A stretch of 61,758 nucleotides of DNA from positions 1 through 61,758 of the forward strand of contig NIVC01004073.1 of the NCBI GenBank assembly GCA_002269645.1, in the 5' to 3' direction. Source of the DNA: Macrostomum lignano. Taxonomy: Eukaryota. Shown here piece by piece: positions 22,806 through 58,263 of this stretch (its first letter is position 1; each line of letters opens with the position of its first letter). The notes beneath the pieces were generated by a model. The model saw only the letters and a program-made list of their open reading frames with translations. It was not told the DNA's origin and made no database searches. Position numbers and translations under genes: made by a program.

Positions 22806-22817
22806 GCTGGCTCTGAG

Positions 22818-24607: not shown

Positions 24608-24973
24608 ATGTCTAGCGAGGACAGCCCCGCCCCAGTGTCCTCTGTCGGGCCGGAAGTGGACGCTCTATCAATGAAAGCGGCCCTATCTAGCGCGCCTACA
24701 ACCGGACACTATATGGCCGGCATGACAGCTGTGGCCTGGCTGTGCCGCAATGCTTATTTAAAAGCGCCCTGGTTCTACCAGCTGCCGCAGGGTCTGGTTG
24801 GCACAGCCGCTGTGTTTACCGCCGGCTATTTGCTAGACGTGTACTGGAATAATGAGCTCAAAATGCGAGCCGCCTACGTGGCCGACTTCAAGCGAACTCA
24901 CCCGGAGCTTTACCCGGAGACCAGGCGGCTGCGCTGGGGCGAGGTGCTCGATCCTTGGGTGCCGAAGCGTTAA
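24608..24973 (+). CDS. NDUFC2: NADH dehydrogenase 1 subunit C2 (B14.5b), intronless, 121 aa
   Basis: Two hydrophobic segments and the C-terminus RAAYVADFKRTHPELYPETRRLRWGEVLDPWVPKR, matching the NDUFC2 pattern YxxLHPExFP...YGExxxxxxPxR. Confidence 0.8.
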   Translation: MSSEDSPAPVSSVGPEVDALSMKAALSSAPTTGHYMAGMTAVAWLCRNAYLKAPWFYQLPQGLVGTAAVFTAGYLLDVYWNNELKMRAAYVADFKRTHPELYPETRRLRWGEVLDPWVPKR

Positions 24974-25970: not shown

Positions 25971-26054
25971 TAATAGTAGTATATATGAGAAAACTACCAC
26001 AACTCTCCCGTTTATTATATTTTTATGTTTGCAACTTGCTCTCACAAATCAGCC

Positions 26055-26453
26055 ATGCAGGTTAGCAACAAGCTCGGTGCACTGCTAACAGCTGTAACTG
26101 CCGCAGTGTTTGTTTCCAGCTGCCTAGCCAATACCCACAACGCCATCCTTGGCGGCTGGAGCCAGATGAAGCAGTCTGATATGGATAGCGACGTATTTCG
26201 CGAGTGCCTGGATGCAGCTGCCGCTGAGTACAACGCCCGGCTAGCTTCATCTGATGGAGATTCCAGTGTGAAAGCTACCGTAGGCCGAGTGAGCCAGGCC
26301 CAGCAGCAGGTGGTGTCTGGAATGAAGTACAAATTTAAGGCTAGTATGACTGTGCCCGGCTGCGACTCCTGCGAGGACAGGAGCTGCGAATTTGTAGTCT
26401 GGTATCGCGCCTGGATGCCGGAGCGAGCCAAGGTGCTTAGCGTGAATTGTTAA
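26055..26453 (+). CDS. Secreted cystatin (cysteine protease inhibitor), intronless, 132 aa
   Basis: Signal-peptide-like N-terminus, LGGW, QVVSG reactive loop, C-terminal cysteines and WYRAW in place of the PW loop. Confidence 0.85.
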   Translation: MQVSNKLGALLTAVTAAVFVSSCLANTHNAILGGWSQMKQSDMDSDVFRECLDAAAAEYNARLASSDGDSSVKATVGRVSQAQQQVVSGMKYKFKASMTVPGCDSCEDRSCEFVVWYRAWMPERAKVLSVNC

Positions 26454-38200: not shown

Positions 38201-41200
38201 ACGGTGGCTTGAACTGGGCAGCGGGGAGAATGGAAGGGCTGAGGAAGCTGGGGTCCCTCTCTCTCTCTCTCGAGGAGAGCATCGGGGGGACTGCCAGTTT
38301 TGATTGAGCCTGAGAGACCGCGTCGGGGCACTCGGGCAGCGGATTCTCCCCCCCCCCCCCCAGCTGGCAGTTTGCCCCGCCCTCTCGGCTTGGCAGCATC
38401 GCGAAAAACATATGCTAGGCTGGGAGATGGAGCGGCCTGAGCAGGCGGAGAAGCGACCCTCAAGACTGATCGACACACCGGCGCTGGGGATGCCTGAAAA
38501 TGCGGGAAATGAGTTTTTTCCTTCTCTCTCTCTCTCTTTCATTTTTCCCATCTACCGTTTCTCCCTTTGCATTCAAATAAAGAGGAAAGGAAGTTCACGG
38601 CCAGAAATTGCAGGAATCCCCGCTGCTAAGCCGGTTGATGGGGGAGGGGGCGGTAGGGAAGCCGCCATGGGAGGCTGGGAAATTGACTGGCGCGTTGCTC
38701 CGCGAGTTGTTCGACACGAGGCCGCCCTCCCGCCCCCAGCCCCCTGCAGGACATTTTGCTGCCACAGAATTGAACGAACGAAAACGCAGATTGAAGTCCG
38801 ACAAGTGACTTCTGCCCGTGCCTGTGCTTGAGAACAACTCTTCTGTGTTCTCTTTGCAATTCTGTGCTGCACTCTTGGCTGCTGTGTCTCTACTGACACT
38901 GTGAATCTCTCTGCTGACACTGTGAATCTCTCTGCTGACACTGTGAATCTCTCTGCTGACACTGTGAATCTCTCTGCTGACACTGTGAATCTCTCTGCTG
39001 ACACTGTGAATCTCTCTGCTGACACTGTGAATCTCTCTGCTGACACTGTGAATCTCTCTGCTGACACTGTGAATCTCTCTGCTGACACTGTGAATCTCTC
39101 TGCTGACACTGTGAATCTCTCTGCTGACACTGTGAATCTCTCTGCTGACACTGTGAATCTCTCTGCTGACACTGTGAATCTCTCTGCTGACACTGTGAAT
39201 CTCTCTGCTGACACTGTGAATCTCTCTGCTGACACTGTGAATCTCTCTGCTGACACTGTGAATCTCTCTGCTGACACTGTGAATCTCTCTGCTGACACTG
39301 TGAATCTCTCTGTTGACACTGTGAATATATCTCTTCTAACAATAAATCTCTCTCCTGACACTGTAAGTCTCTCTCCTGACACTACTTTTAGATATTACAA
39401 CTTCCAAAACTTACAAAAATTGAATTCAGTTACGGCTCGTGTGCCTGAATATTCAGACGCCATTGCGGAATGAATAAGCGGCGGCCAATGAAGCGGGTGC
39501 ATTGGCCTCTCTAAGCATTCTCTAAGCTGTTGCTCCCCAAGCTCTTCCAAGATGAAGAACAGGGAGAGAATGAGAGAGAGAACGGCATGATTGATGCGAT
39601 GGAGAAACTGGGAGGATGGATCATTGCACTGGGGAGAGTCGCATACATAGAGAGATGACAGCCGACTCGCCAATGCCGAGCAATTCACGCCAAGGAGGGT
39701 TGCGAGGTTCTCGTGCAAGACGTGATAAATCGCCGCCGCCCGATGCCTTTTTATCCAGGCTGATTCTCTCCTTAGCCTCGAGATCCAAATGCCGCTATCA
39801 AATATTTGCTTGGAGATTGTTGACCCTGACTTCCACAGTTCACTCGCGAGCGACCCAAGGGGGGGGAAGGGAGAGGACGCTGGAACAAGTGGAGTCCTAT
39901 AGTAGAGCCACGGGAATGAACCGCGCTTTGGGAAATTATCCCGACGATTACCTCCCCGCCAGCCGTAATTGACTGCCTGATTAGTCCTCTGTGCTTTCAA
40001 TTCAACTTGGTTTTGCAAATTAGAAAAAAATGCACGATTTCGAGCAACCGACTACTCATATTGGCGCTTATTTGCTCACCGAATACTCTGGGATTAGGCA
40101 GGGGAATTCTTGGATAGTTACATTTAAAAGCGGAAAACAGATGGAAGACAGACAGGTCCGTTGGTCCGTCGCGCGGAATTTGAATGTGGTTTGTCAGTTT
40201 AATGGTAAACAAAACTGAAAATTCCCACTTGCAGCGAAATTTTTTGCGAGTCCATGATTATTCCTCATTTTTGGGATTAATTTTTTAGTCTGGATGCCAG
40301 CTGGCTCTTCAAAAATGAGGCTTCACTCGGCATTTGGACTGCGGTTTGGTCCCCGAGCCCTGGAGACGGACCGCCATTGCATCTATTATTTATTGATGGG
40401 TTGACAAATCCAATTGTAATTATTTTTAAGTGCTTTCATTGCCGTTCAACAGTGCATTGCTATTCTCACTGAGCGCTTCTCACTCCCTTTTCGCTCCCTT
40501 CTCACTCCCTTGTCACTCCCTTCTCACTCCCTTCTCACTCCCTTCTCACTCCCTTCTCATTCCCTTCTCACTCCCTTCTCACTCCCTTCTCACTCCCTTC
40601 TCGCTCCCTTCTCACTTCCCTGTCACTCCCTTCTCCCTCCCTTGTCACTACCTTCTCCTTCCCTGTCACTCCCTTCTCACTCCCTTTTCACTCCCTTCAC
40701 ACTCCCTTGTCACTCCCTTCTCATTCCCTTCTCACTCCCTTCACACTCCCTTCACACTCCCTTCTCACTCCCTTCTCACTCCCTTCTCACTCCCTTCACA
40801 CTCCCTTCACACTCCCTTCACACTCCCTTCTCACTCCCTTCTCACTCCCTTCTCACTCCCTTCTCACTCCCTTCTCACTCCCTTCTCACTCCCTTTTCGC
40901 TCCCTTCTCACTTCCCTGTCACTCCCTTCTCCCTCCCTTGTCACTACATTCTCCTTCCCTGTCACTCCCTTCTCACTCCCTTCTCCCTCCCTTGTCACTC
41001 TCTTCTCACTCCCTTGTCAATCCCTTTTCACTCCCTTACCATTCCCTTTTCACCCTTGTCTCACTCCCTTCTCCCTCCATTCAATGGAAGGGAGCCAAAG
41101 GAAGGGATTCACTCCATTTTAACTCCCTTCTCACCCCTCTACCCTCATCCTTTCTCTTCTCCTCTCCCTACTCTCTTTTTTCTCTCTTTCCTTGTCCTTT

Positions 41201-42213
41201 CTCTTTCTTTCTTTTTTATATCCAATGAAACTTTGCCCTCTTAATTTATAGATAATCAAAAACCGCCACTCAATTCGCTAGCGACGGGGGCTATAGCCAC
41301 TGCACCGCAGTCATGCCCATTCTGTAGATCCCTGAGCATGCATAAAGAACTGGGATTCGTACTCAGCTCACGGCACTGTCTATATTGGCACTGTCTGTCA
41401 TACAGGGTGAGCAGAGGTACCCTAAACCTAACCCTAACCCTAACCCTAACCCTAACCCTAACCCTAACCCTAGCCCCAACCCTAACCCTAACCCTTACCC
41501 TAGCCACTCCCACACTATTGCTCAGCAATGAGGTGCGGCCGCTCACCAATCGTGGTGATCACGGTCACCACGTACAGCAGCGCGCCGGAGAAGCTCCAGT
41601 TGAGATCGGCGTCATCGTAGCGGCCGTTCCAGCCGTCATCAGTCAGCCGCTTGATCAGCTGCCGGCTGAACTCGCGCATCTGGGCGGCGAATCGCCGTTC
41701 AAAGTCCTGCACGGCTGCCGCCGCCTGCGAGGACATGTTGCCGGCTGCCCCGTCTGCCGCCGCCGCTGCCAGAGCGACGTTGGTCTGACTGGAGTTCCAC
41801 CGACGCAGCCACCGTTGAGCCTCGTCGAGCAGCTGGCCGCTGACATTTTTCACGGTGCTGTCCAGGTGGTCTCTGGCGGCGGCCTTCACTCGCAACTCGT
41901 CGCCCTGCTCAAGCCGACGGAACAGCTCGCCGCCAATGATGACGTACAGAATAATGAGGCTGGACAGGCCCAGATTGGAGAACATGAATGCCAGGAAATG
42001 CTTGCAGCAGGTCACCGTCTCTTTGATTCGCTTCTTTCGACGCTGCCGACGGGCGTGCCGCCTCCGCTGCGACTTGGTGTTGTCGGCTGTCGAGGTCATA
42101 GCGGTCATGTTGATGGGGGCGGAGCGCTGGCTCTGCATCGGGGCCCGCACGGTGGGCCGCACTGTCGGGCGGGACATCTGCGGCCTCGGCCGCGGCGGCT
42201 GACTGAGCTCCAT
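35204..42213 (-). CDS. TWiK-family two-pore-domain potassium channel (K2P), 3 exons, about 780 aa
   Basis: Exons 42213-41547, 37868-36495 and 35505-35204 are joined by phase-1 introns. P1 is WSFSGALLYVVTVITTIG|YG and M2 is LYAFFGIPL. P2 is YFCFITLSTIGFGDIVPG and M4 is FYVAIGLSVFAMCFKLMQE. Confidence 0.93.
38885..39330. repeat. 21-bp minisatellite in K2P intron 1
   Basis: ACTGTGAATCTCTCTGCTGAC repeated about 21 times. Confidence 0.97.
40470..41085. repeat. Pyrimidine-rich 11-bp-based repeat (CTTCTCACTCC)n
   Basis: Visible tandem units. It explains ORFs between 40430 and 41244. Confidence 0.93.
41421..41505. repeat. Interstitial telomeric repeat (CCCTAA)n
   Basis: About 14 mostly perfect CCCTAA units. 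Confidence 0.95.
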
Positions 42214-42976
42214 TGTCTTTGTGACCTTGACCGTGACCTTGACCTTGACCTTGACCTCGAACTTGACCTTGACCTTGATTTTGAATAATCTGAAACTTTT
42301 CAGCCAGACTGTCGGAGTGACGCTCCTGCTCTGATCCAGATTTTTTTTAAAAACCCGCTTTGCTGCAGAGTTTTATTGTCACCCAGCCAACCAAACGATG
42401 CATGGATTCCGCAGCCTCAGCCAATCGGAATCGCTGGCTTGACAACAGGCAAAGTCCGCAACGAATCTTGAAAGATTAAAGATTTCTTCTCATAGCTCTC
42501 CTGCGTGTTTTCTGCATTTTAATTTTTCCGATTGTTCGAGCTGTGTCCCGGAGTCAGTTGAATGTTGGCCCACTGTGTCCGTGATTTTACAGACATGATG
42601 CCTGATATTCAGAAGTGCACCACTTCTGTTAGTTCACAGACGGGCATTTTGTCTAGTTCGGCTTGCACTTTAGTATAGCTGATTGCATACATGAATGCCG
42701 AAGCTTGTTCTCGCTGTGAATACTCGAATAGGCAAACTGCTTTAGAATTGCCGAGCTTGTCATAATGAGCTGCGGATTGTGCAGGATGCAGAGCGGGGCA
42801 GCCCAAAGAAAAATTGTTACTTCCAGCTGACTGCCTCCAGCAGCCCATTGTGCCGCTCTTCTTCACTGCCCACTTCCACTCGCTTCGTGTCCGGGCTGCG
42901 GGGGAGCTTGGACACTTGAGAGCTTGGGAAGTGCGGCTGCCTGCTTTGCATACGGTGAGCCACTGGGAGCCTGTAG

Positions 42977-43813
<837 letters not shown>

Positions 43814-44165
43814 CACATTAACTTCCTGCTCCCACATGGCCCACCCAGCTCCTGTCAGGCAGTAAAGTGCAGGCCAGTCATTTTCGGACTTTTATTCGTG
43901 TCCGTTTTGAATTATGCAAATGGCGCCCTGAGCTGCGCTGGACTCCGTGAGTCGCTCCTACACTCTGGCTGGTAGATTTTCAGCTCGGGTTTCCAATCTC
44001 AAAGCATTATTATGTTTTATTACTAGTTGTTACCTGCCAATCGAAACTCATTTACGATGTGAAGCATGGCGTGAGTGCCTGCCTGTCTCCAATTTCCTAT
44101 GCAGATTGCGCCTGATTTTACAATTTTCAGGAATTGCGAAATCAAAATCAACATCAAAATTCAGG

Positions 44166-45004
44166 GCCAAAATATCGGCTATGGGAGTGCCAAAATACCG
44201 GCTATGGGAGTGCCAAAATACCGGCTATGGGAGTGCCAAAATACCGGCTATGGGAGTGCCAAAATATCGGCTATGGGAGTGCCAAAATATCGGCTATGGG
44301 AGTGCCAAAATATCGGCTATGGGAGTGCCAAAATATCGGCTATGGGAGTGCCAAAATATCGGCTATGGGAGTGCCAAAATACCGGCTATGGGAGTGCCAA
44401 AATATCGGCTATGGGAGTGCCAAAATATCGGCTATGGGAGTGCCAAAATATCGGCTATGGGAGTGCCAAAATATCGGCTATGGGAGTGCCAAAATATCGG
44501 CTATGGGAGTGCCAAAATACCGGCTATGGGAGTGCCAAAATACCGGCTATGGGAGTGCCAAAATACCGGCTATGGGAGTGCCAAAATATCGGCTATGGAG
44601 TGCCAAAATATCGGCTATGGGAGTGCCAAAATATCGGCTATGGGAGTGCCAAAATATCGGCTATGGGAGTGCCAAAATATCGGCTATGGGAGTGCCAAAA
44701 TACCGGCTATGGGAGTGCCAAAATATCGGCTATGGGAGTGCCAAAATATCGGCTATGGGAGTGCCAAAATATCGGCTATGGGAGTGCCAAAATATCGGCT
44801 ATGGGAGTGCCAAAATATCGGCTATGGGAGTGCCAAAATATCGGCTATGGGAGTGCCAAAATATCGGCTATGGGAGTGCCAAAATATCGGCTATGGGAGT
44901 GCCAAAATATCGGCTATGGGAGTGCCAAAATATCGGCTATGGGAGTGCCAAAATATCGGCTATGGGAGTGCCAAAATATCGGCTATGGGAGTGCCAAAAT
45001 ACCG
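44166..45004. repeat. 23-bp minisatellite
   Basis: GCCAAAATATCGGCTATGGGAGT repeated. It explains three 300-360-aa pseudo-ORFs. Confidence 0.97.
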
Positions 45005-45389
45005 GCCACAGTATTGGCCGGTAAAATAGAGCAACAGAGTCCAGCTTCTGTTCCCGAGCCCTGTCAGCTCATTAGAGATGGCGCAGTGAAAAATTGTAGT
45101 TTTGTAAAAATCTCCACAAATCTAATTGAGCTTCTTGGCGCGTGAAACCCTCCAAAATTAGCGATATTTGAAACTGAAATTTTCCCAGTGCCAACTCTAT
45201 ATCGAATTTCTACCTTAATTAATTAGGACCTTGAAAACCGGAAGATGTTTCCGTGAGAGAAAATTTGAACTCGAAGGACTCGAACTTGATCTGGCTCTGA
45301 AAAGTTTTCGGTAGATTTGGAAACAGAGAAATTAATTGTTGTGGCGCTAAAATATTATATGTTAGCACCTAAATAGTCTATTTTAGCGC

Positions 45390-46432
45390 TAAAATGGCTA
45401 TTGTGGCACTAAAATGGCTAATGTTGCGCTCAAATGGCTATTGTGGAGATAAGATGGCTAATGTTGCGCTCAAATGGCTATTGTGGAGATAAGATGGATA
45501 GTGTGGCGATAAGATGGATAGTGTGGCGATAAGATGGATAGTGTGGCGATAAGATGGATAGTGTGGCGATAAGATGGATAGTGTGGCGATAAGATGGATA
45601 GTGTGGCGATAAGATGGATAGTGTGGCGATAAGATGGATAGTGTGGCGATAAGATGGATAGTGTGGCGATAAGATGGATAGTGTGGCGATAAGATGGATA
45701 GTGTGGCGATAAGATGGATAGTGTGGCGATAAGATGGATAGTGTGGCGATAAGATGGATAGTGTGGCGCTAAAATGGCTAGTGTGGCGCTAAAATGGCTA
45801 GTGTGGCGCTCAAATGGCAAGTGTGGCGCTCAAATGGCTAGTGTGGCGCTAAAATGGCTAGTGTGGCGCTAAAATGGCTAGTGTGGCGCTCAAATGGCTA
45901 GTGTGGCGCTCAAATGGCTAGTGTAGCGCTCAAATGGCTAGTGTAGCGCTCAAATGGCTAGTGTGGCACTCAAATGGCTAGTGCGGCGCTCAAATGGCTA
46001 GTGTGGCACTCAAATGGCTAGTGCGGCGCTCAAATGGCTAGTGCGGCGCTCAAATGGCTAGTGCGGCGCTCAAATGGCTAGTGTGGCACTCAAATGGCTA
46101 GTGCGGCGCTCAAATGGCTAGTGTGGCGCTCAAATGGCTAGTGTGGCGCTCAAATGGCTAGTGCGGCGCTCAAATGGCTAGTGCGGCGCTCAAATGGCTA
46201 GTGTGGCACTCAAATGGCTAGTGCGGCGCTCAAATGGCTAGTGTGGCACTCAAATGGCTAGTGCGGCGCTCAAATGGCTAGTGTGGCACTCAAATGGCTA
46301 GTGCGGCGCTCAAATGGCTAGTGCGGCGCTCAAATGGCTAGTGTGGCACTCAAATGGCTAGTGTGGCACTCAAATGGCTAGTGCGGCGCTCAAATGGCTA
46401 GTGTGGCGCTCAAATGGCTAGTGTGGCTTTAA
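45390..46432. repeat. 20-bp minisatellite with block-wise variants
   Basis: A GTGTGGCGATAAGATGGATA block is followed by GTG(T/C)GGC(G/A)CTCAAATGGCTA blocks. Confidence 0.97.
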
Positions 46433-47047
46433 AATATATATATTCCAGACAAATAATTCTCTGTAAAAAGGCAGACAAATGAAAAATAATTGTAAGAGCC
46501 TTTACTTGAACAACCTGCCCTTATTAGAACGAACGCAGGCCTGCATCAGTTTCAGATGCTATTCTATAATTTTGAAATGTCTATAAAAACGTGCCAAAGA
46601 GATTTGCATCCAGTCTGACTATGGTTAAAGTTACTATTTAAAGATTTTCGAAGACGTGTTCAGGCTTGATTCCCTGTGCTTCAATATTTGCTGTCGTATC
46701 TACATGTATTTGCCAACTGAAAATTTGCAATCCACAACCCTCTTCTCTTCTCTGTTCAACTAAGCCCGTCTTTTGTCTTGGAAAATACCTTTTAGAAAAT
46801 ACTGCGGTTTGTATGCAGATTGTTATGGCTCTTCTATAGCCAACAAGTTGGATTGGCAATTTTTTTATATTTTTGGTTGCCAACCGGTCTGAATGCTATG
46901 GTGTTAACATGGTGTCCACGGCTGCCAGTTGGGAAACATAAGGGAAACTTTTCAGTTTCTTTGTATCAATTAGCAGTAGTTTATCTTCTGAAGTTACAAA
47001 TAGAAAATGAAGCAGGTATCATATTTTCCAAGCTCATCCCAGCACAA

Positions 47048-47610
47048 GTGAGTGAATGAGTGAGTTCATGAGTTCATGAGTGAGTTCATGAGTGAGTTCA
47101 TGAGTTCATGAGTGAGTTCATGAGTGAGTTCATGATTTCATGAGTGAGTTCATGAGTTCATGAGTTCATGAGTGAGTTCATGAGTTCATGAGTTCATGAG
47201 TTCATGAGTTCATGAGTTCATGAGTGAGTTCATGAGTTCATGAGTTCATGAGTTCATGAGTGAGTTCATGAGTTCATGAGTTCATGAGTGAGTTCATGAG
47301 TTCATGAGTGAGTTCATGAGTTCATGAGTTCATGAGTTCATGAGTGAGTTCATGAGTTCATGAGTGAGTTCATGAGTTCATGAGTTCATGAGTGAGTTCA
47401 TGAGTTCATGAGTTCATGAGTGAGTTCATGAGTGAGTTCATGAGTTCATGAGTTCATGAGTGAGTTCATGAGTTCATGAGTGAGTTCATGAGTTCATGAG
47501 TGAGTTCATGAGTTCATGAGTGAGTTCATGAGTTCATGAGTGAGTTCATGAGTTCATGAGTGAGTTCATGAGTTCATGAGTGAGTTCATGAGTTCATGAG
47601 TGAATTTATG
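47048..47610. repeat. (GAGTTCAT / GAGTGAGTTCAT)n array, block 1
   Basis: Mixed 8- and 12-bp units. Confidence 0.97.
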
Positions 47611-48359
47611 AGCTATTGAGCTCATGATTGTATGAAAGATCTGTGCTGCAAAAGAATAAATTGTGCGTTCGAATACTCAAACTGGTTGCTTCACAGTCCT
47701 CCATTTGGGCCATAGACAATGAGAAGCCAGTCTTCAATCAGCTGGACTCTCCCAGTAAGAAATTTATTGCTTGCTGCTACTCATGAGCTCTTGAAAATGC
47801 AGTAGTAGCAAGGAGACTGGGTGACCAATCGGATATCCTAGAGAATGGTAATGGTAGTCTATGGTAAAACTCGTTGAGCACAGACTTTGAGCACAGGGGC
47901 GGGAGTGAGGCAATAAAAACCCGCGTAGAATTCGTAAAAGTACACGCGAACTTATAATTTAGTTGGCAGCCGGCTCTGAGGAGTGTTTTTGGTAGCCCAG
48001 TAAAAATAGCCTGCATGGAGACTGACGCTTCGGAAGAGCTGACAGGGGGGATAGCATTTTCTCACCACCCCCCCCCGTCTGCCTCATCTCTCCCTCCCTG
48101 CCTCTCGGATCCTTTTCAGACAGCTTCTTGAGATTTCAGACTGCCAGCGGCCGGCCATGCATTAAATCAGAAGTCAGACTGGTGGGTGAGTGAACGTACA
48201 TGCATGCATGTCGAATGTATTGGTGCTGGGTGTACATTTGATGGTGGCGTGGGCTTTTCATATTTTCAGCTGGCGAAAAGCAACATATAGCGTTTGGAGA
48301 GTGTGCCTCGCTTTTATGCGTGTATGTGAGAATAAGTACATTTATTGTGCGAGTGTGTC

Positions 48360-48968
48360 TGTGAGTTCATGAGTGAGTTCATGAGTGAGGTCATGAGTGA
48401 GTTCATGAGCGAGTTCATGAGTGAGTTCATGAGTTCATGAGTGAGTTCATGAGTGAGTGAGGTCATGAGTGAGTTCATAAGTGAGTTCATGAGTGAGTTC
48501 ATGAGTGAGTTCATGAGTGAGGTCATGAGTGAGTTCATGAGCGAGTTCATGAGTGAGTTCATGAGTGAGTTCATGAGTGAGTGAGTGAGTGAGTTCATGA
48601 GTGAGTTCATGAGTTTATGAGTGAGTTCATGAGTGAGTTCATGAGTGAGTTCATGAGTGAGTTCATGAGTGAGTTCATGAGTGAGTTCATGAGTTCATGA
48701 GTTCATGAGTTTATGAGTGAGTTCATGAGTGAGTTCATGAGTGAGTTCATGAGTGAGTTCATGAGTGAGTTCATGAGTGAGTTCATGAGTGAGTTCATGA
48801 GTGAGTTCATGAGTGAGTTCATGAGTTTATGAGTGAGTTCATGAGTTCATGAGTTTATGAGTGAGTTCATGAGTGAGTTCATGAGTGAGGTCATGAGTGA
48901 GTTCATAAGTGAGTTCATAAGTGAGTTCATGAGTGAGGTCATGAGTGAGTTCATGAGTGAGTGAGTGA
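48360..48968. repeat. (GAGTGAGTTCAT)n array, block 2
   Basis: Same family as 47048-47610, mostly 12-bp units. Confidence 0.97.
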
Positions 48969-49419
48969 GCTAAGCTAGTTAGTTGCCAAGCAAATGAACG
49001 ATAAAGGCCATGGCCTGCATGCAGTGAGCAACTTATCACAGACCGCCCCCTCTGCCTGTGACTCGATACATCTTGTTGTGTGTTTTTTCAGTCTTGGAAG
49101 TGGAAAGTGCGCAGTGCCAGGCGTATAGACAATCCAGGACTGTCTGCTGGCCGAGTCCCCTGTGCAGAGTTCGGGGAGACAGATTGCTGCAGATGGCATT
49201 GTCCGCCTAGCGATTCGTTTGAATTACCCGATTAGCTATGCCTGCTGGTTGCAGGAAATCACAATGCGAATGAAATACCTATTTTAGCATTGTGTGTTTT
49301 CCAGTATTGATATTTTATATGCTGGTCCCATACTAGGTTTCTGAAGCGAGATCACAGTTATATCATCTATTTAGTGCTGTCAGAAAAATTGGATTCAAAA
49401 AGGCTTTGAAGCTCTGGAA

Positions 49420-49945
49420 TCCCTGAGTCTCTGAATCCCTGAGTCCCTGAATGACCTGTGTCCCTGAATACCTGAGTCCCTGAATCCCTGAGTCCCTGAA
49501 TCCCTGAGTCCCTGAATTCCTGAGTCTCTGAGTCCCTGAATCCATGAGTCCCTGAATCCCTGAGTCCCTGAATACCTGTGTCCCTGAATCCCTTAGTCCC
49601 TGAATCCCTGAGTCCCTGAATCCCTGAGTCCCTGAATCCCTGAGTCCCTGAATCCCTGAGTCCCTGAATCCATGAGTCCCTGATTACCTGAGTCCCTGAG
49701 TCCACGAATCCTTGAATCCTGAATCCCTGAGTCCCTGAATCCCTGAGTCCCTGAATCCATGAGCCCCTGAATCCCTGAGTCCCTGAATCCCTGAGTCTGT
49801 GAATGAATCCTTGAGTCCCCGAATCCTTGAATCCTTGAGTCCCTGAGTCCTTGAATCTCTGAATCCCTGAATCCCTGAGTTCCTGAGTCCCTGAATCCCC
49901 GAGTTCCCGAGTTCTTGAGTCTGTGAATCCCTGAGTCCCTGAATA
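49420..49945. repeat. (CCCTGAAT CCCTGAGT)n 8/16-bp repeat
   Basis: Directly visible. Confidence 0.95.
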
Positions 49946-50684
49946 TTTGAAAACTGTGCAGAATCGGCAGCCCGTTGATTTCCCTTCAAAGCACCATGCA
50001 GTCACATGAATCACAGGAGTTCGTACTAGTGCTTTTTTCATAAACTCATCTCATCATCGGTGCCAGCCGGTCATGATTTAATTGAGCTGTCAATCGATAC
50101 ACCCGGAGTCCCGTCACGTCTCGAATCTGTCAGGCCTTCGTCTTGGCTAAATCTGGTTTTAGACGAGCCTTATTCTATCCAGGACCAGATATCAGAGCGC
50201 GCTATGAGGCTAAAATACTTCAATCGATACAGATAGGGAAGATTCAACATTTACTGTTCGCATCGAAGCTGTCAAAGCTGACTGCGCGCGGTAAAATAAT
50301 ATTTGGTCGCTGCTTTTATTTGCTGACAGATTGCAGCTGTCAGCAGCTGGGCCGGTATGAAAGCGCCGCTTAGATAACAGAGCCGCTGCCTCATCCAGAG
50401 AATGCATCAGCCTGAGAGCATAGCGACTAGACGCTCTCCCAACTGGCAAGCTGGGAGGATGCTGCCCAATAAAATGAAATGGAAATTTGCTCGTTGGCGA
50501 GTCCGCTTGAAACTAAAAAGTGGCACTCCAGCCTAGGGGCCCAGACAGTTCAAAACCGTCGGATCGACTTTGCCTGTCAAACTTGATGAGGTTCACTGGG
50601 GGCGTTTCAATTTTTCTTGAGCGTAGTATAGCATTGCCAATATGCTGATTTCTACTCCGTCAAAAATCGATGAGGTGGGGCCAT

Positions 50685-51020
50685 GGGGCTAAGGGTGTGA
50701 GGTGGGGAGGTGGGGCATCGGGGGTAAGGAATGTAGAGACAGAGATAGCAGCTGAGGGTGTGAGGTGGGGAGGTGGGCCATCGGGGATAAGGAATGGAGA
50801 GACAAAGATAGCAGCTGAGGGTGTGAGGTGGGGAGGTGGGCCATCGGGGATAAGGAATGGAGAGACAGAGATAGCAGCTGAGGAAGTGAGGTGGGGAGGT
50901 GGGCCATCGGGGGTAAGGAATGGAGAGACAAAGATAGCAGTTGAGGGTGTGAGGTGGGGAGGTGGGGCATCGGGGGTAAGGAATAGAGAGACAGAGATAG
51001 CAGCTGAGGGTGTGAGGAAT
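50685..51020. repeat. 63-bp minisatellite, about 5 units
   Basis: GCTGAGGGTGTGAGGTGGGGAGGTGGGCCATCGGGG...GAGACAAAGATAGCA has a period of 63. Confidence 0.92.
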
Positions 51021-51589
51021 GGAAAGACAGAATGCGATTCAATAATACTTACAAAACAAGCGTCTGTAATACAAAAATTCATCAAATACCTCCTCAGTAT
51101 ATATTTAGAAACCAGGGGATTAACTTTGCGTCTATACTGATAAGAAGAGACATATAAGCAATGAGGTTTCGAAAATAAACCATTGGAAAGTAGCAGTTGA
51201 CGGATGGACTCAACTTCAATTAGACCTCAAGACCTGAACGGGGAGTTCTCAGAATAGTGAGTCGGAATAGCGATCCCGACTGATGGATGGATTTTCAACA
51301 AATCTCATTCGGCCGAGAAGCTTTTTATTTAATTAACCTGATCTCAAATGCGAATCTAAGCTGCTTCAGGTGTCCATTTCAGTCAGTTGATTCCTTGCCG
51401 TTTTTCTCCTGGGATCAGAGAAGTCCGCAGCTGATGGATGGGGCGGCTTGGTGGCACTTTTAGTGCAGATTGACCCAAAAGTGCTTATTGTTACTCCACT
51501 GGGTATTAGTTAGCGGCAAAACAGTGACACACTGAAAGTTTTAAGCGAAATTACCCTCTGAATTCGGGGGTGGGTCAGGAACTGAAGAT

Positions 51590-52492
51590 TCGGAGGTGGT
51601 GGGTCAGGAACCGGGGATTCTAAGGTGGGTCAGGAACCGGGGATTCTAAGGTGGGTCACGAACCGGGGATTTTAAGGTGGGTCACGAACCGGGGATTTTA
51701 AGGTGGGTCAGGAACCGGATATTCTGAGGTGGGTCAGGACCGGATATTCTGAGGTGGGTCAGGAACCGGATATTCTGAGGTGGGTCAGGAACCGGATATT
51801 CTGAGGTGGGTCAGGAACCGGATATTCTGAGGTGGGTCAGGAACCGGATATTCTGAGGTGGGTCAGGAACCGGATATTCTGAGGTGGGTCAGGAACCGGA
51901 TATTCTGAGGTGGGTCACGAACCGGGGATTTTAAGCTGGGTCACGAACCGGGGATTTTAAGGTGGGTCAGGAACCGGATATTCTGAGGTGGGTCGGAACC
52001 AGATATTCTGAGGTGGGTCAGGAACCAGATATTCTGAGGTGGGTCAGGAACCGGATATTCTGAGGTGGGTCAGGAACCGGATATTCTGAGGTGGGTCAGG
52101 AACCGGATATTCTGAGGTGGGTCAGGAACCGGATATTCTGAGGTGGGTCAGGAACCGGATATTCTGAGGTGGGTCACGAACCGGGGATTTTAAGGTGGGT
52201 CACGAACCGGGGATTTTAAGGTGGGTCAGGAACCGGATATTCTGAGGTGGGTCAGGAACCGGATATTCTGAGGTGGGTCAGGAACCGGATATTCTGAGGT
52301 GGGTCAGGAACCGGATATTCTGAGGTGGTCAGGAACCGGATATTCTGAGGTGGGTCAGGAACCGGATATTCTGAGGTGGGTCAGGAACCGGATATTCTGA
52401 GGTGGGTCAGGAACCGGATATTCTGAGGTGGGTCAGGAACCGGATATTCTGAGGTGGGTCAGGAACTGAAAGTTTCGGACGTGGGTCAGGAA
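51590..52492. repeat. 26-bp minisatellite
   Basis: GAGGTGGGTCAGGAACCGGATATTCT with the variant AAGGTGGGTCACGAACCGGGGATTTT. Confidence 0.96.
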
Positions 52493-54509
52493 CCGCGGAC
52501 TCCGAAGCAGATCACGATACAGAGATTAAAGACTTTATGAGCAAGCTTTCTTCAAGCACCCATTTATGAGATCAGCAGAAAAAGTGTGAAGTTGGCTAGA
52601 CAAAAATGAATTGCCGAGTTATTAACGATCTTGCTATCTCGCTATCAAAAGAGGAGCGGATCGAGACTGAACTGAGGTGTAGGGATAGATAAGCACTTGG
52701 GGTGAGCATTTTATAGCCCTACTCAAAGCCTTGATCCAGCCAAGCTCTTCCTTGCACCAGCTCCGCACCGAATATTATTGAGCTCGAATAGAAACTTCGA
52801 GTCGAGAAGAAAAAAGCTCGAAAAGTTTGCAAGTTTGATCCCACTACGAAGAAAATCCCAGCCTGTGCTTGAGTTTACTCACTAGCTAAGCTAACTGCAA
52901 TCCCCTTTCTCCTCTCTCCTTTTCTTCCTCACTCGAATGCACTTATTAAAGTGTCGTGAAATCGCCAAAAATTAGGTTAAAAGTGAGCACTCTTTCATGG
53001 GCTAGGTATGGCCAAGTCTGAGCTGCAAAGCACTGCAGATCCGACAGTGCATTACTCGCAGACAAAATAATGTCCTTACAGTGCATGGCCTTTGCACTAA
53101 TCCTCTGTTGCAGATTCCATCTCCATCTCGGGCTGGTGATTGCGTTTCGGCAAAAATAGATGCTGCACAGATGGATCTGCGGAGAGAACGCGCCTCCCAT
53201 GTCAATTTCGCGTCAAAGCTACCCGGCAGTCTCCTCTGTATTATTCAAGCTCGCGACTTCCCCGATTCGAAAAAATTAATGGAAATTTTTCTCCCTGGAA
53301 TTGGCGCCTGAAAAAATTTCCATATATTGCGAAAAGAGCCTCGTTGCTCCCGGAAGCGGCTGACACCGACACCGGCTGGGGACCTCCGCCTCAGGGGGGG
53401 GGGGGGTCAGGAGCCGAGGCGAGGGGACTCCAGGATTCCAATCGATTTTTCAGGCCAGCTTGTTCAACAGAATCGAAGCGCAATGTCCAGAGGGAGACCA
53501 AGACAGACAGCCAGAAAACCAGGAAGGAGATTGCTTGGGCAGAGGCGCGAGATTTCAACTTAAAGAATTTCCACTCTTGCTTTCAGAAGAAAAGAAGCCG
53601 TTATTCTTGTGCGTCACAATCTGCCGCTGTGCTGTAAAATATTTAAAGAGAAGTGCCGCCAACAAAAGAGAAAAGTGTTTTTCTTTGTTACTTTAAAAGC
53701 CAAAAACACCTTTCGCGGCAGTCATTTCTCAAGTCTATAATTTATTGCCCCGATGCTTGGACTCTTTTAGCTAAAAATCAAAAAAAAATTTTTCTTTTCA
53801 TGGATATTTACCTAATATTCTGTTCACGCCACTGTCAGTAGAATGGAAAGGATGTTGATGGCGAAAAAAAACGAATCGATACAAAATTTCACCATTTTGA
53901 AAACCCATTTAGGTCATCATTCAATCAAAAAAGGTGAGAGGAAAAGTGCTTCTTTCCTGTGTCATGACTTTCGAGACTGAAATGTTTATCCCATTTCCAT
54001 GAAAATATAAGTTTCAGTTTTATAGAATCCAGTCATTAAGTAGTTTGAGAATTGCAGCTCAGAAACAGCAGAATCGAGGTGGACAGACGTCTCAGGAGGG
54101 GGAGGTCGCAATAAAATATTAATAATCTTTTAGCGGATATAAAAATTGACGGCCTTGGAGACTCGCGTGCAACTTCATCTTCGCCATTTTGAGCACTAAT
54201 TGAGTAGCTCCGGGATCCCAGGTGGAACGGAGCGCTGGGAGCTGATGGCGGGGGTAGCACCGGATGCAGCTGCTGCCTAGAATTTTTTGTGTTGATGGCT
54301 TGGTTCAGGGACACCGCGAGCTAGACATCCGGGCAGGAAGTTGAGCTCTGCAGCAAGGAAAGAGTGATGGTCCGGATGTATTATTCTCAAATCGAACTAG
54401 CTAAATGGGATCTATGATCCCCAAATCGAACTCAGTGAGACTTATGATCCCCAACTCGAACTCAGTGAGACTTATGTCCTTTGAGTGCCAGCATTATATT
54501 CCAAATATT

Positions 54510-54651
54510 CCATTTTACAGCTGGGTTGAACTGAAGCAATGCAGAGTTGAGTGTCTTGCTCAAGGACACAAATTGTTCCAGTGGGATCTGGAATCGAACC
54601 CCTAACCTTCAAGTCATGAGTCCGACACTTTAACCGCAAAGCTACAACTTC
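54510..54651 (-). mobile_element. tRNA-derived SINE (CORE-like), copy 1
   Basis: The minus strand reads GTTGTAGC...GGGGTTCGATTCCAGATCCCACTGGAACAATTTGTGTCCTTGAGCAAGACACTCAACTCTGCATTGCTTCAGTTCAACCCAGCTGTAAAATGG: a B box plus a CORE-like domain. Confidence 0.8.
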
Positions 54652-55033
54652 AAGCCTCCAATTAAGAGCGCTCCAGACTCTCTGTCTCCAGTGCTCCCTG
54701 GCCGCTTTTCACTTCGTCCATTTCCGTCTCCAGGGAGGATGCTTCAGAGCAGGCATAAAAATATTATAAAGATCCAACTTATCCGGCCGTTCGTCATCCA
54801 AATCCACCTCCCTACGGTTAGGCATCCCAATGGGATCGTTCTCCCTTCCAGGCCGAGCCTTAGGAACTATAGGGACATTATTGTTGGGGCGCTGGCTGTA
54901 TGAAGAAATTGAAGAAATTCAATTTTTGCCGGGTGCGGGCCGGCTACTCATCAATCCTCAAGCCATGAAACGCACTAGCAAAGTACAATACTACTCGAAT
55001 ATATGATAATAATGCGAATGTATAATAATAATA

Positions 55034-55200
55034 AGGGGTTGTAGCCTAGTGATTATAGCGTCGGACTCACGACTGAAAGGTCAGGGGTTCGATTCCCGAT
55101 CCCACTGGAACAATTTGTGTCCTTGAGCAAGACGCTTAACTCTGCATTGCTTCAGTTCCCCAGCTGTAAAATGGGTGCCAGCATTAGCTGGGGTAATTGA
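55034..55200 (+). mobile_element. tRNA-derived SINE (CORE-like), copy 2
   Basis: A box TAGCCTAGTGA, B box GGTTCGATTCCC (55086-55097), then GTGTCCTTGAGCAAGACGCTTAAC...CCCAGCTGTAAAATGGG. Confidence 0.85.
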
Positions 55201-55548
55201 TAGTATGGGTGGCGACCCCCAGTCCCTGGACTGAACAGCCGTACGCAGCCTTCAGATGCGCGCGCAATAGCTGCGGCTGAGCTGTCGGTTGCACATCTGG
55301 CCATTAGGACAGTTGTAATGAAGTAATAATAATTGCAGCAGAGTTTTGGTCACTCTGGTGCGTCCCACAACCAGCACTGAGACGATTCTGCTCATTCTGC
55401 TGGCTCCTGAGCACATGCAAGCGCGCCAATGCTGTATGCAGACACGCACTCATGCACTGTACAGCGATCCCGACTATGTAATCGTGGTGTCGCGAGAGTC
55501 AGACATGTTCAAGGCTGCTACTCGACCATATACTCAAGCGAAACAGCC

Positions 55549-56303
<755 letters not shown>

Positions 56304-57092
56304 AGTGCATCAGTCAGACGAAAGTAATAGTTAAAAAGTACATCAGGGTTTTTTAGTAAGCGCGGCAGACCCGGAGTCTCCTAAAGAGAAATAGGAGACG
56401 AAATGGCCGGTGGCGAGCAGTTTTATGGCCCCCACTGAGAAAGAAATGTCCGGCCGAGTCTGATCGATAAAGGGAAGAGTTGGGATGGAATTACTAGCTG
56501 GCAAGATATTCCTAAGCTGCATTATAAGCTGGGAAATGAATCACTTTGGCTGGCCGCCATAGGCTCGGATATGGAGTACTAAAACTGGCAATCTGGAGTG
56601 GAAACTTGCTGACTTTTCATCCGGTTTTTATGCGAAAAAACCTTCGGCGCGGACAACAACGAGAAGAAGGACGCTGAGAGTGTACATGCCTGGATGATTA
56701 TAAAGTCATGCGCCGCTGTACACCTGTGTGAGCGTGTGTATGCAAGTCTGTGCCTGCGTACAGTCTTGGCGCGCTTGTTATGTGCTTGTATTTAAAACCA
56801 AAGATTTCTGTTTGGCTTACGGTTTAACGGGGTTTTTACCAGAGACGAGACTCATATAAAGAAAAATGCGACTAGAGAAGATGGCTGAGAGATACAGGAA
56901 CAGCTTCTGTTCCAGATTCTGTTGGAAAAGGATTGAGACTGGATCTCCAGATACCGGAACTAGAACTCCATGGTTCCAAGTGAGCAGTTAAAAGTCTCAG
57001 TTTCCTCACTGGAGAAGTGTCTCCGGACGGGACCAGCAGTGAGAACCGTTAAGTCACAAAGTAGAACTTCAACTCATTCGAACATCTGAAGA

Positions 57093-58263
57093 ATGGCGGA
57101 TGAACAAGGTAAGGTATTTAGAACCTGTGCGTGGATGAAATCATTGATTTATTTTAAACATTGCCAAACAACAACCAATCAAACATAACTTATTTGTGAC
57201 TTTTTCACTGGATGAATGAATGTGATGCTGCGATCTGAAACTCTAATTAAAAATTACAAAATTACTAACTAATTCAGTGTTACATATTGAATTATTGGGA
57301 CATTGCTTTCTCAGGGTTCCTTGAATGTCTTTATTATTACCGTATAAAGAGACGTAATTGCTGCTTTAAATTTACATGCTTGCATTGCTCTGGTTATTAA
57401 TTTTTTAAGCTGAAGCTGCTGAGCCTGAAGCGACTGAGCCTGAAGCGACTGAGCCTGAAGCGACTGAGCCTGAAGCGACTGAGCCTGAAGCGACTGAGCC
57501 TGAAGCGACTGAGCCTGAAGCGACTGAGCCTGAAGCGACTGAGCCTGAAGCGACTGAGCCTGAAGCGACTGAGCCTGAAGCGACTGAGCCTGAAGCGACT
57601 GAGCCTGAAGCGACTGAGCCTGAAGCGACTGAGCCTGAAGCGACTGAGCCTGAAGCGACTGAGCCTGAAGCGACTGAGCCTGAAGCGACTGAGCCTGAAG
57701 CGACTGAGCCTGAAGCTGCTAAAACTGAAGCGACTGAGCCTGAAGCTGCTAAACCTGAAGCGACTGAGCCTGAAGCGACTGAGCCTGAAGCGACTGAGCC
57801 TGAAGCGACTGAGCCTGAAGCGACTGAGCCTGAAGCGACTGAGCCTGAAGCGACTGAGCCTGAAGCGACTGAGCCTGAAGCGACTAAGCCTGAAGCGACT
57901 GAGCCTGAAGCGACTGAGCCTGAAGCGACTGAGCCTGAAGCGACTGAGCCTGAAGCGATTGAGCCTGAAGCGACTGAGCCTGAAGGGACTGAGCCTGAAA
58001 GGACTGAGCCTGAAGCGACTGAGCCTGAAGCGACTGAGCCTGAAGCGACTGAGCCTGAAGCGACTGAGCCTGAAGCGACTGAGCCTGAAGCGACTGAGCC
58101 TGAAGCGACTGAGCCTGAAGCGACTGAGCCTGAAGCGACTGAGCCTGAAGCGACTGAGCCTGAAGCTGCTAAACCTGAAGCTGCTGAGCCTGAAGCTGCT
58201 AAACCTGAAGCTGCTGAGCCTGAAGCGACCGAGGCCGAGGCTGCTGAACCTGAAGCAGCTTAA
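57093..58263 (+). CDS. Putative acidic pentapeptide-repeat protein MADEQA-EAA-(EPEAT)n, 2 exons, about 289 aa
   Basis: Exon 1 is 57093-57108 (ATG GCG GAT GAA CAA G|GTAAGG). The acceptor TTTTTTAAG at 57409 restores GCT in phase. About 54 15-bp units stay in frame without stops and end [15 protein letters not shown] at TAA 58261-58263. Confidence 0.55.

What the first reader, a model, noticed from the sequence alone, without database searches (positions are those of the whole stretch)
57093..58263. Hidden gene inside a 15-bp satellite: extremely acidic (EPEAT)~54 protein
The ORF track shows only the (LSLKR)n and (RFRLS)n frames. A strong mini-exon ATG GCG GAT GAA CAA G|GTAAGG splices in phase to TTTTTTAAG|CT, opening the E-P-E-A-T frame for 283 codons. 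The terminal units vary synonymously (GAG/GAA, GCG/GCT/GCC/GCA) while keeping E-x-E-A-x, which suggests selection on the protein. The product would be a roughly 289-aa, about 40% Glu, disordered polyanion without a signal peptide. It could act as a cation buffer, a spacer or a partner of basic proteins (inference). I know no named homologue.
Basis: partly seen in the sequence, partly recalled or inferred. Interest (0 to 1): 0.7.

Follow-up and report, generated by a model that had tools for sequence, protein, structure and literature searches.

The report
Possible acidic repeat gene in flatworm minisatellite
A 15-base repeat array in the flatworm Macrostomum lignano carries unusually good start and splice signals and could encode a 289-residue, extremely acidic (EPEAT)n protein. 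No transcript or relative could be found, so it remains a plausible but unproven orphan gene.

Summary
The sequence is as described. A 15-bp array (57410-58256, 56.5 units, no indels) joins to the mini-exon ATGGCGGATGAACAAG (57093-57108). Together they read MADEQ-AEAA-(EPEAT)n...EPEAA-stop: 289 aa, 37.7% Glu, net charge -104.

The window is Macrostomum lignano DNA, about a third of it tandem arrays.

For a gene:
- The donor AAG|GTAAGG is the best-scoring of 6064 GT sites in the window.
- A T-rich AAG acceptor with a 58-nt AG-free zone sits exactly at the array edge.
- This is the only one of 26 arrays (39 open array-frames) with a spliced ATG model.
- A model this good is expected by chance about 0.014 times per window.

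Against a gene:
- A stronger acceptor inside the "intron" (57315) gives a 33-aa ORF that stops before the array.
- A second ATG (57100) puts the same donor in the LKRLS frame.
- Codon usage fits EPEAT poorly (GC3 40% against 71% in neighbouring genes).
- The synonymous excess is weak (6 of 13, p=0.07).
- The only matches are bacterial (TEPEA)n linkers, which are convergent.

Absence from GenBank says nothing, because the Mlig_3_7 GenBank annotation left out repeat-overlapping transcripts.

Verdict: probably a young orphan coding minisatellite (about 0.4). A non-coding array remains a serious rival.

The parts
56855..56860 (+). TATAAA hexamer, a possible core promoter about 235 nt upstream of the start codon
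   Evidence: Read directly from the sequence. Function is inferred only.
56970..57089 (+). Upstream ORF in the putative 5' leader: 39 codons plus a TGA that ends 3 nt before the main ATG
   Evidence: ATG 56970, MVPSEQ...HSNI stop. It would lower translation of the main ORF or require reinitiation (inference).
57093..57108 (+). Coding mini-exon ATG GCG GAT GAA CAA G (MADEQ plus the first base of a codon). The start context is AAGAATGG. The donor is AAG|GTAAGG.
   Evidence: The donor scores 11.25 bits, the best of 6064 GT sites on both strands. A second ATG at 57100 is in phase 0 and would read LKRLS.
57109..57409 (+). Proposed intron: 301 nt, 30.6% GC. It holds a TACTAAC branch-point-like site (57263-57269) and a competing acceptor TTTCTCAG|G whose exon would start at 57315.
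   Evidence: GC. Acceptor scores are 7.1 (57315) and 5.0 (57410). Using 57315 gives [33 protein letters not shown]-stop. An AG-free zone runs 57350-57408.
57410..58263 (+). Proposed terminal coding exon. Two bases complete the junction codon, then 283 codons of the (EPEAT)n frame, then TAA at 58261-58263.
   Evidence: The frame is closed by TAA at 57406-57408 just upstream, so it is open only across the array (read).
57410..58256 (.). 15-bp minisatellite: 56.5 units, 43 of them identical (GAAGCGACTGAGCCT). Variant units (GCTGCT, AAA) cluster at both ends and at 57713-57757.
   Evidence: No copy of the unit or of its flanks occurs elsewhere in the window or in locus L001.

Best explanation
This is a lineage-restricted (orphan) two-exon gene of Macrostomum lignano whose whole second exon is a coding minisatellite.

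Proposed mechanism (all steps after the sequence itself are inferred):
1. Transcription starts downstream of the TATAAA at 56855.
2. The leader and the first 16 coding bases (MADEQ plus one base) are spliced from the strong donor at 57108|57109 to the T-rich AAG acceptor at 57409|57410. An in-phase alternative acceptor lies at 57415|57416.
3. Translation runs through about 56 units of GAG-CCT-GAA-GCG-ACT to the TAA at 58261.

The product is a protein of about 30 kDa that is almost pure (EPEAT)n: net charge about -104, no signal peptide, no predicted fold. It would act through bulk physical properties. It could be an extended polyanionic chain serving as an electrostatic shield or counter-ion for basic partners or cations. 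Each T-E-P-E also fits a casein-kinase-2-type phosphorylation consensus.

The array grows and shrinks by whole 15-bp units through slippage or unequal exchange. That always preserves the frame, so protein length is expected to differ between homeologs and individuals. The near-identity of the core units points to a recent expansion from an older, Ala/Lys-containing 30-bp unit ([10 protein letters not shown]) that survives at the array ends.

Shown: the sequence, the frame, and the quality and rarity of the signals. Inferred: transcription, use of this acceptor, translation and function.
For: - Donor AAG|GTAAGG is the single best of 6064 GT sites in 2 x 61.8 kb. It scores above the proven MRI1 donor, 11.25 against 9.83.
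- An acceptor as good as the observed one, within -3..+8 nt of a boundary and preceded by at least 55 AG-free nt, occurs at 0.43% of AT-rich positions. Without the AG-free condition the figure is 5.3%.
- Of 26 arrays (39 fully open array-frames), only this one has any ATG-donor-acceptor model.
- The empirical chance of a model this good is 3.5e-4 per boundary-frame, or 0.014 per window.
- The first ATG has a purine at -3 and G at +4, and is the one in phase with EPEAT.
- The intron is AT-rich (30.6% GC) and the exon GC-rich (58.5%), close to the 60.7% of known coding exons in the window.
- The synonymous share of distinct variants is highest in the EPEAT frame (6 of 13, p=0.07). In the LKRLS frame the same terminal changes would be Leu>Pro and Ser>Arg.
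- No other phase-1 acceptor within the remaining 4.3 kb opens more than 76 codons.
- The (TEPEA)n pentapeptide is a viable polypeptide. It recurs in many bacterial proteins and varies there in 5-residue steps.
- AlphaFold2 on the single sequence gives mean pLDDT 46 and no secondary structure, consistent with disorder.
- Absence from the GenBank annotation is uninformative, because the Mlig_3_7 GenBank annotation excluded transcripts overlapping repeat annotations (PMC5730564).
Against: - No transcript, peptide, paralogue or orthologue was seen. The exact protein is not among about 15 billion sequences. No eukaryotic relative appeared in two searches.
- A stronger acceptor lies upstream at 57315. 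It shares TTTCTCAG|G with the proven MRI1 acceptor and has TACTAAC 46 nt upstream. It would give a 33-aa ORF and leave the array untranslated.
- The boundary acceptor is only average (578 sites as good) and uses the disfavoured AAG.
- Codon usage is poor for this genome: GC3 is 40% against 71%, and log-odds are 0.97 against 4.26 for SLKRL.
- A 39-codon uORF precedes the ATG.
- A protein with only 5 non-repeat residues is unusual.
- The genome is about 15% simple and tandem repeats, and this window is packed with neutral-looking arrays, some inside introns of the MPP gene. The prior for any one array being coding is therefore low.
- With lax splice thresholds, 0.76 chance models are expected per window.
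- If many windows were scanned, some chance cases this good are expected.
Confidence: 0.4

Rival explanations
1. This is an ordinary non-coding minisatellite. The array is one of many neutral tandem arrays in a repeat-dense part of the M. lignano genome. The ATG, donor, acceptor and TATAAA are chance matches, and nothing is spliced or translated.
For: - The window has 58 TRF rows, covering about 26 distinct arrays.
- Four of the six frames are open across the whole array, so an open frame is expected.
- About a third of the arrays have a period divisible by 3, as chance predicts.
- Indel-free arrays with variant units at the ends are the rule here.
- Codon usage does not favour EPEAT.
- The synonymous excess is not significant.
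- With lax thresholds, 0.76 chance splice models are expected per window.
- There is no homologue and no annotation.
Against: - The donor is the best in the window.
- The full model is expected only 0.014 times per window.
- The acceptor plus AG-free zone at the exact boundary occurs at 0.4% of comparable positions.
- No other array shows such a model.
Confidence: 0.3
2. The locus is transcribed and spliced, but the array is not translated. The strong donor pairs with the better acceptor at 57314|57315. The mRNA then carries only a 33-codon ORF ([33 protein letters not shown]) or is effectively non-coding, and the minisatellite lies in its 3' untranslated part.
For: - The acceptor at 57315 scores 7.1 against 5.0 for 57410. 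It shares TTTCTCAG|G with the proven MRI1 acceptor. It follows a TACTAAC branch-point consensus by 46 nt, with no AG in the last 36 nt before it.
- A uORF and weak codon usage fit a poorly translated RNA.
Against: - It does not explain the acceptor and the 58-nt AG-free zone placed exactly at the array edge.
- It does not explain the in-phase stop at the array end.
- A decoy acceptor of this strength is expected 0.39 times in any 300 nt, so its presence is not evidence by itself.
- The 33-aa peptide has no support of its own.
Confidence: 0.2
3. The locus is coding, but not as proposed. One option is that the basic Leu-rich (LKRLS)n frame is read, starting at ATG 57100 with the same donor, or at ATG 56881 with donor 56979|56980. 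The other is that the mini-exon belongs to a larger gene whose next exon lies beyond the window, so that the array is intronic, as in the neighbouring MPP gene.
For: - Both LKRLS models pass the same splice thresholds.
- The SLKRL frame has the best codon-usage score, 4.26, with GC3 of 80%.
- Arrays sit between exons of the MPP gene in this window.
Against: - ATG 57100 lies downstream of a better-context ATG.
- Terminal variants are radical in the LKRLS frame (Leu>Pro, Ser>Arg), with no synonymous excess.
- No downstream phase-1 exon longer than 76 codons exists in the window.
- None of the ORFs between 47 and 61.7 kb matches any known protein.
Confidence: 0.1

Closest known systems
Gadid antifreeze glycoprotein (AFGP) gene and other ORFs built or lengthened by tandem repeats (PMC6410882; PMC12888051)
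   Same: The coding sequence is a tandem array of a short unit whose length is a multiple of 3. The start of the ORF comes from a small upstream spliced exon. There is no homologue outside the lineage. Length evolves by gain and loss of units (abstracts read).
   Different: AFGP has a secretory signal, a proven function, and a documented non-coding ancestor in sister species. Here there is no signal peptide, and expression, function and ancestry are all untested.
Bacterial secreted or lipoproteins with (TEPEA)n / (TEPEV)n linkers, e.g. Ruminococcus sp. MBQ8539802.1 and relatives P0169, P0232, P0255, P0297
   Same: They carry the identical pentapeptide repeat, up to 97% identity over the repeat. 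Copy number changes in 5-residue steps within a cluster: lengths 408, 423, 428, 433, 438 and 443 aa.
   Different: There the repeat is a spacer between a signal peptide and folded domains. Nothing resembles this locus outside the repeat, and they come from a different domain of life. This is convergence of low-complexity sequence, not homology.
Trypanosoma brucei procyclins, with EP dipeptide and GPEET pentapeptide repeats (PMC1277927, PMC2132531; details from my own knowledge)
   Same: They are small proteins dominated by acidic, proline-containing short repeats that form an extended polyanionic chain.
   Different: Procyclins have a signal peptide and a GPI anchor and coat the cell surface. 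The present ORF has neither. The organisms are unrelated.
Highly charged disordered cytosolic or nuclear polyanions such as prothymosin-alpha or 'Hero'-type proteins (my own knowledge, not tested here)
   Same: No signal peptide, extreme negative charge and predicted disorder. Function comes from bulk electrostatics.
   Different: Those proteins are not perfect tandem repeats, are conserved, and are experimentally characterised.
Neutral minisatellites of the M. lignano genome
   Same: A head-to-tail array of a 15-bp unit with homogenised core and variant ends, sitting in a region full of similar arrays. Simple and tandem repeats make up about 15% of the genome (PMC5730564).
   Different: This is the only array in the window bracketed by a start codon, a top-ranked donor, a boundary acceptor and a stop in one frame.

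Membership tests
Spliced protein-coding gene | A canonical GT-AG intron joining an ATG-bearing exon in phase to an open frame that ends in a stop | tested here: met
   57093-57108 joined to 57410-58263 gives 870 nt, or 289 codons plus TAA. Donor scores 11.25, acceptor 4.97.
Spliced protein-coding gene | The proposed acceptor is the preferred one for that donor | tested here: inconclusive
   A stronger acceptor at 57315 (score 7.1) lies inside the intron. The boundary acceptor has the longer AG-free zone, 58 nt.
Spliced protein-coding gene | Transcript or peptide evidence | not testable with these tools
   No M. lignano RNA data are reachable. The GenBank annotation excluded repeat-overlapping transcripts, so absence is uninformative.
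Spliced protein-coding gene | Codon usage typical of the host's genes | tested here: not met
   GC3 is 40% against 71% in 1835 training codons. Log-odds are 0.97, below the SLKRL frame at 4.26. Only 5 distinct codons, so the test is weak.
Spliced protein-coding gene | Purifying selection, or conservation of the frame in relatives | tested here: inconclusive
   Within the array, 6 of 13 events are synonymous (p=0.07). The homeolog NIVC01003400.1 is collinear, but its copy of the locus could not be fetched.
Neutral minisatellite | A head-to-tail array of near-identical units with variants at the edges | tested here: met
   56.5 copies, 93% matches, 43 identical units, variants at both ends.
Neutral minisatellite | No association with gene signals beyond chance | tested here: not met
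   The model is expected 0.014 times per window at the observed signal strength, and it is unique among 26 arrays.
Procyclin-like acidic repeat surface coat | An N-terminal signal peptide and a C-terminal GPI-anchor signal | tested here: not met
   The N-terminus is MADEQAEAAEPE and the C-terminus is ...AEPEAA. Neither has a hydrophobic segment.
Bacterial (TEPEA)n linker proteins | Similarity extending beyond the repeat into flanking domains | tested here: not met
   The hits align only over the repeat. They have signal peptides and unrelated domains.
De novo or orphan repeat-built gene (AFGP-like origin) | The coding sequence is a tandem array and no homologue exists outside the lineage | tested here: met
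De novo or orphan repeat-built gene (AFGP-like origin) | The orthologous region is non-genic in sister species, and the gene is expressed and functional in this one | not testable with these tools
   No access to other Macrostomum genomes or to expression data.

The most novel reading that the evidence does not exclude
This could be a very young coding minisatellite caught in the act. A short ancestral Ala/Glu/Pro/Lys peptide exon ([10 protein letters not shown]-like) would have been inflated recently by unit expansion into a translated polyanion of about 290 residues and charge about -104. It would have almost no non-repeat sequence. Its length would differ between the three M. lignano subgenomes, and it would be under selection for charge and composition rather than for sequence.
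Probability: 0.2. Interest if true: 0.55.

Novelty: new member of a known kind. Interest (0 to 1): 0.3.

Why it matters
If it is expressed, this would be a clean invertebrate example of a gene whose whole coding body is a homogeneous minisatellite. That bears on how tandem-repeat expansion creates and lengthens orphan ORFs.

It would also point to a blind spot. The GenBank annotation of this genome, which is about 15% simple and tandem repeats, removed transcripts overlapping repeats, so whole classes of repeat-encoded proteins would be missing.

If it is not expressed, it is a useful warning. In repeat-dense genomes, open frames, ATGs and even good splice sites next to arrays are not enough to call a gene.

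Tried and rejected
1. An exact look-up of the 289-aa protein found nothing in the collection.
2. A word-indexed homologue search and an exhaustive representative search returned thousands of hits. All were period-5 Pro/Glu low-complexity matches. The best were bacterial (TEPEA)n linkers. I rejected them as homologues.
3. Pfam gave no family. Rfam gave nothing in the window.
4. I tried to reach the homeologous copy of the locus. MRI1 identified M. lignano contig NIVC01003400.1, which is collinear with the window at 94-98% identity. The locus would lie near 91-93 kb of that record, but fetching needs an annotated gene within 10 kb.
5. A chimeric query of every ORF of at least 45 aa between 47 and 61.7 kb, plus the other array frames, found no annotated protein. 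No allele or homeolog comparison was therefore possible.
6. The flanks are not copies of a dispersed repeat within the window or L001, so I dropped a transposon-borne array as an explanation.
7. The poly(A) signal test was uninformative. Proven genes in the window also lack AATAAA near their stops.
8. A literature search for the peptide and for acidic repeat proteins in Macrostomum found nothing specific.
9. No minus-strand gene model passed the same thresholds.
10. Structure prediction was run only to check disorder. No fold search was made, because the model has no confident structure.

Full report
**What the window is.**
The 279-aa exon at 9902-10741 is 100% identical to the methylthioribose-1-phosphate isomerase (MRI1) protein of Macrostomum lignano (BOX15_Mlig017452g1). 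The contig carrying that gene is NIVC01003400.1 of assembly Mlig_3_7. It is collinear with the first 21 kb of the window at 94-98% identity.

That level of divergence fits another homeolog or assembly of this neopolyploid flatworm. Its three subgenomes differ by 1.4-2.4% in SNPs (bioRxiv 10.1101/2023.04.19.537444).

Bona fide genes in the window:
- MRI1;
- a MAGUK/MPP gene (19568-22805);
- NDUFC2 (24542-24973);
- a cystatin (26025-26453);
- a two-pore K+ channel (36391-42213, minus strand).

The window is saturated with tandem arrays: 58 TRF rows, about 26 distinct arrays. Several lie between MPP exons. The published genome is about 15% simple and tandem repeats (PMC5730564).

**The observation.**
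The array at 57410-58256 has a 15-bp period, 56.5 copies and no indels. 43 units are the identical GAAGCGACTGAGCCT. Variant units sit at both ends and at 57713-57757.

Joining ATGGCGGATGAACAAG (57093-57108) to 57410-58263 gives a 289-codon ORF that ends in TAA. It reads MADEQ-AEAA-(EPEAT)n-...[25 protein letters not shown].
- Glu is 37.7% and the net charge is -104.
- There is no hydrophobic N-terminus.
- AlphaFold2 on the single sequence gives mean pLDDT 46 and no secondary structure.

The frame is closed by TAA one codon upstream of the array and by TAA at its end, so it is open exactly across the array.

**Is it more than chance?**
Openness is not. Four of the six frames are open across the whole array. 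A fifth is open in the consensus unit but closed by variant units. Many other arrays in the window have open frames with a contiguous ATG.

The splice model is more than chance. I scored it with a generic metazoan weight matrix.
- The donor AAG|GTAAGG scores 11.25 bits. It is the single best of 6064 GT sites on both strands and beats the proven MRI1 donor at 9.83.
- The acceptor TTATTAATTTTTTAAG|C is only average: 4.97 bits, with 578 sites as good.
- The acceptor lies exactly at the first base of the array and follows a 58-nt AG-free stretch.
- Among positions with an AT-rich upstream context, 5.3% have an acceptor this good within -3..+8 nt. Only 0.43% also have an AG-free zone of at least 55 nt.
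- I applied one rule to all 26 arrays (39 fully open array-frames): donor at least 7 bits, boundary acceptor at least 4 bits, in-phase ATG. Only this array yields any model.
- Random boundaries give such a model at 2% per frame with these lax thresholds, or 0.76 per window. At the observed signal strength the rate is 3.5e-4, or 0.014 per window.

Other points in favour:
- The first ATG has a good context (AAGAATGG).
- A TATAAA lies about 235 nt upstream.
- The intron is 30.6% GC and the exon 58.5%.
- No other phase-1 acceptor in the remaining 4.3 kb opens more than 76 codons.

**What weakens the gene reading.**
1. **Competing acceptor.** Inside the proposed intron is a better acceptor, GACATTGCTTTCTCAG|G (exon start 57315, 7.1 bits).
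   - It shares TTTCTCAG|G with the proven MRI1 acceptor and lies 46 nt downstream of a TACTAAC branch-point consensus.
   - Using it gives [33 protein letters not shown]-stop and leaves the array untranslated.
   - A decoy this strong is expected 0.39 times per 300 nt, so it is not decisive either way.
2. **Second ATG.** ATG 57100 is in phase 0 with the same donor and reads the LKRLS frame. ATG 56881 with donor 56979|56980 does the same. The 'in phase' coincidence is therefore worth less than it looks.
3. **Codon usage.** Against 1835 codons of the window's real genes, the EPEAT frame uses minor codons (CCT 11%, GCG 19%, ACT 23%, GAA 32% of their families).
   - GC3 is 40% against 71%.
   - Log-odds are 0.97 for EPEAT and 4.26 for SLKRL.
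   - This rests on five codons, so it is weak.
4. **Selection.** Of 13 distinct substitution events, 6 are synonymous in the EPEAT frame against 24% expected (p=0.07). The LKRLS frame has 4 of 13 (p=0.6) (the printout swapped the labels of shift 1 and shift 2).
   - In LKRLS the terminal changes would be Leu>Pro and Ser>Arg. EPEAT is therefore the better of the two frames, but the signal is not significant.
   - 'E-x-E-A-x is kept' is not strictly true, because Glu becomes Lys in 5 units.
5. **Upstream ORF.** A 39-codon uORF ends 3 nt before the ATG.
6. **Poly(A) signal.** There is no AATAAA within 1.1 kb downstream. Proven genes here lack it too, so this is uninformative.

**Relatives and annotation.**
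- The exact protein is not in the 15-billion-sequence collection.
- Both homology searches return only low-complexity matches.
- The closest hits carry the same (TEPEA)n pentapeptide. They are bacterial signal-peptide proteins in which the repeat is a linker. The one cluster member that carries a name is from a Ruminococcus sp. MAG.
- Within one such cluster, lengths differ in 5-residue steps. This is a nice parallel for whole-unit turnover, but it is convergence, not homology.
- Pfam finds nothing.
- No annotated M. lignano protein matches any ORF between 47 and 61.7 kb, or any other frame of the array.
- The authors state that transcripts overlapping repeat annotations were excluded from the GenBank annotation (PMC5730564). 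A gene made of a minisatellite would have been filtered out, so its absence says nothing.
- I could not fetch the homeologous locus, which should lie near 91-93 kb of NIVC01003400.1. No annotated gene lies within 10 kb to anchor on.

**Weighing.**
The prior that a given minisatellite in this genome is a coding exon is low, about 1%. The splice and boundary evidence is worth a likelihood ratio of roughly 50-200. Smaller positive terms are the period divisible by 3, the start-codon context, the TATAAA and the synonymous bias. Smaller negative terms are codon usage, the uORF, the competing acceptor and the near-absence of non-repeat residues.

| Explanation | Probability |
|---|---|
| Locus produces the EPEAT protein | about 0.4 |
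| Chance signals on a neutral array | about 0.3 |
| Spliced transcript in which the array is untranslated | about 0.2 |
| Another frame, or a larger gene | about 0.1 |

**Mechanism if real.**
The steps below are inferred.
- A TATA-driven transcript is made.
- A 301-nt intron is removed.
- The first AUG is used, possibly by reinitiation after the uORF.
- The product is a polyanion of about 30 kDa with no fold. It would act by charge and extension, as a shield, spacer or counter-ion for basic proteins or cations.
- About 47 T-E-P-E casein-kinase-2-type sites could raise the charge further.

The array evolves by whole-unit slippage or unequal exchange, which cannot break the frame. The Ala/Lys-containing 30-bp units at the ends ([10 protein letters not shown]) look like the older state. 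The homogeneous EATEP core looks like a recent expansion.

**Comparison with known systems.**
- **In origin and architecture**, the closest are repeat-built orphan genes. One is the gadid antifreeze glycoprotein gene, with a 9-nt unit array plus a spliced upstream exon (PMC6410882). Another is the tandem-repeat elongation of de novo ORFs (PMC12888051).
- **In chemistry**, it resembles trypanosome EP/GPEET procyclins, but it lacks their signal peptide and GPI signal. It also resembles bacterial (TEPEA)n linkers.

It is not a member of any sequence family.

**Verdict.**
The feature is real. The gene model is plausible and statistically unusual for this window, but unproven. At best it is a new member of a known kind, an orphan coding minisatellite. 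Interest is modest until a junction read or a conserved frame is shown.

Noticed in passing
window 9642-10826: The MRI1 gene of the window has a 1-bp deletion near 10633 relative to the annotated protein of contig NIVC01003400.1 (GTAATC there, GTATC here), which shifts the last 64 codons. It is either a long-read assembly error or a decaying homeolog.
   Followed up: partly
window 1-21000 versus L001 (NIVC01003400.1:34597-55783): The window is collinear with a Mlig_3_7 contig at 98.4% identity, falling to about 94%, with array-length differences. This fits a second homeolog or assembly of the same region in a neopolyploid genome.
   Followed up: partly
window 18638-23520: Minisatellite arrays with periods of 28 and 43 bp lie between the three large exons of the MAGUK/MPP gene. 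Arrays of 33 and 41 bp lie just outside it. Arrays inside introns are therefore normal here.
   Followed up: no
window 5524-6339 (-), array 5632-6088: A 21-bp array has four open frames. A 271-aa minus-strand ORF starts at an ATG with a non-repeat N-terminus and runs into (AGTPAAL)n. It is another 'coding-looking' array. It has no Pfam support and no gene call at the matching place in L001.
   Followed up: partly
window 41419-41502: An interstitial telomere-like (ACCCTA)14 tract lies just downstream of the first large exon of the two-pore K+ channel gene, probably inside its intron.
   Followed up: no
window 42200-56350: About 14 kb between the K+ channel gene and the candidate gene is almost entirely tandem arrays. 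They include (AGAT)208, (ACAG)191 and units of 23, 20, 12, 16, 63 and 26 bp. No ORF there matches any known protein.
   Followed up: partly
window 57315-57400: Using the stronger internal acceptor gives a 33-residue, Cys-rich peptide ([33 protein letters not shown]). It could be a small ORF in its own right or simply noise.
   Followed up: no
proteins P0297, P0304-P0310 (bacterial cluster): Members of one 90%-identity cluster of a bacterial (TEPEA)n-linker protein differ in length in steps of 5 residues (408, 423, 428, 433, 438, 443 aa). The same pentapeptide repeat therefore also turns over by whole units in bacteria.
   Followed up: no
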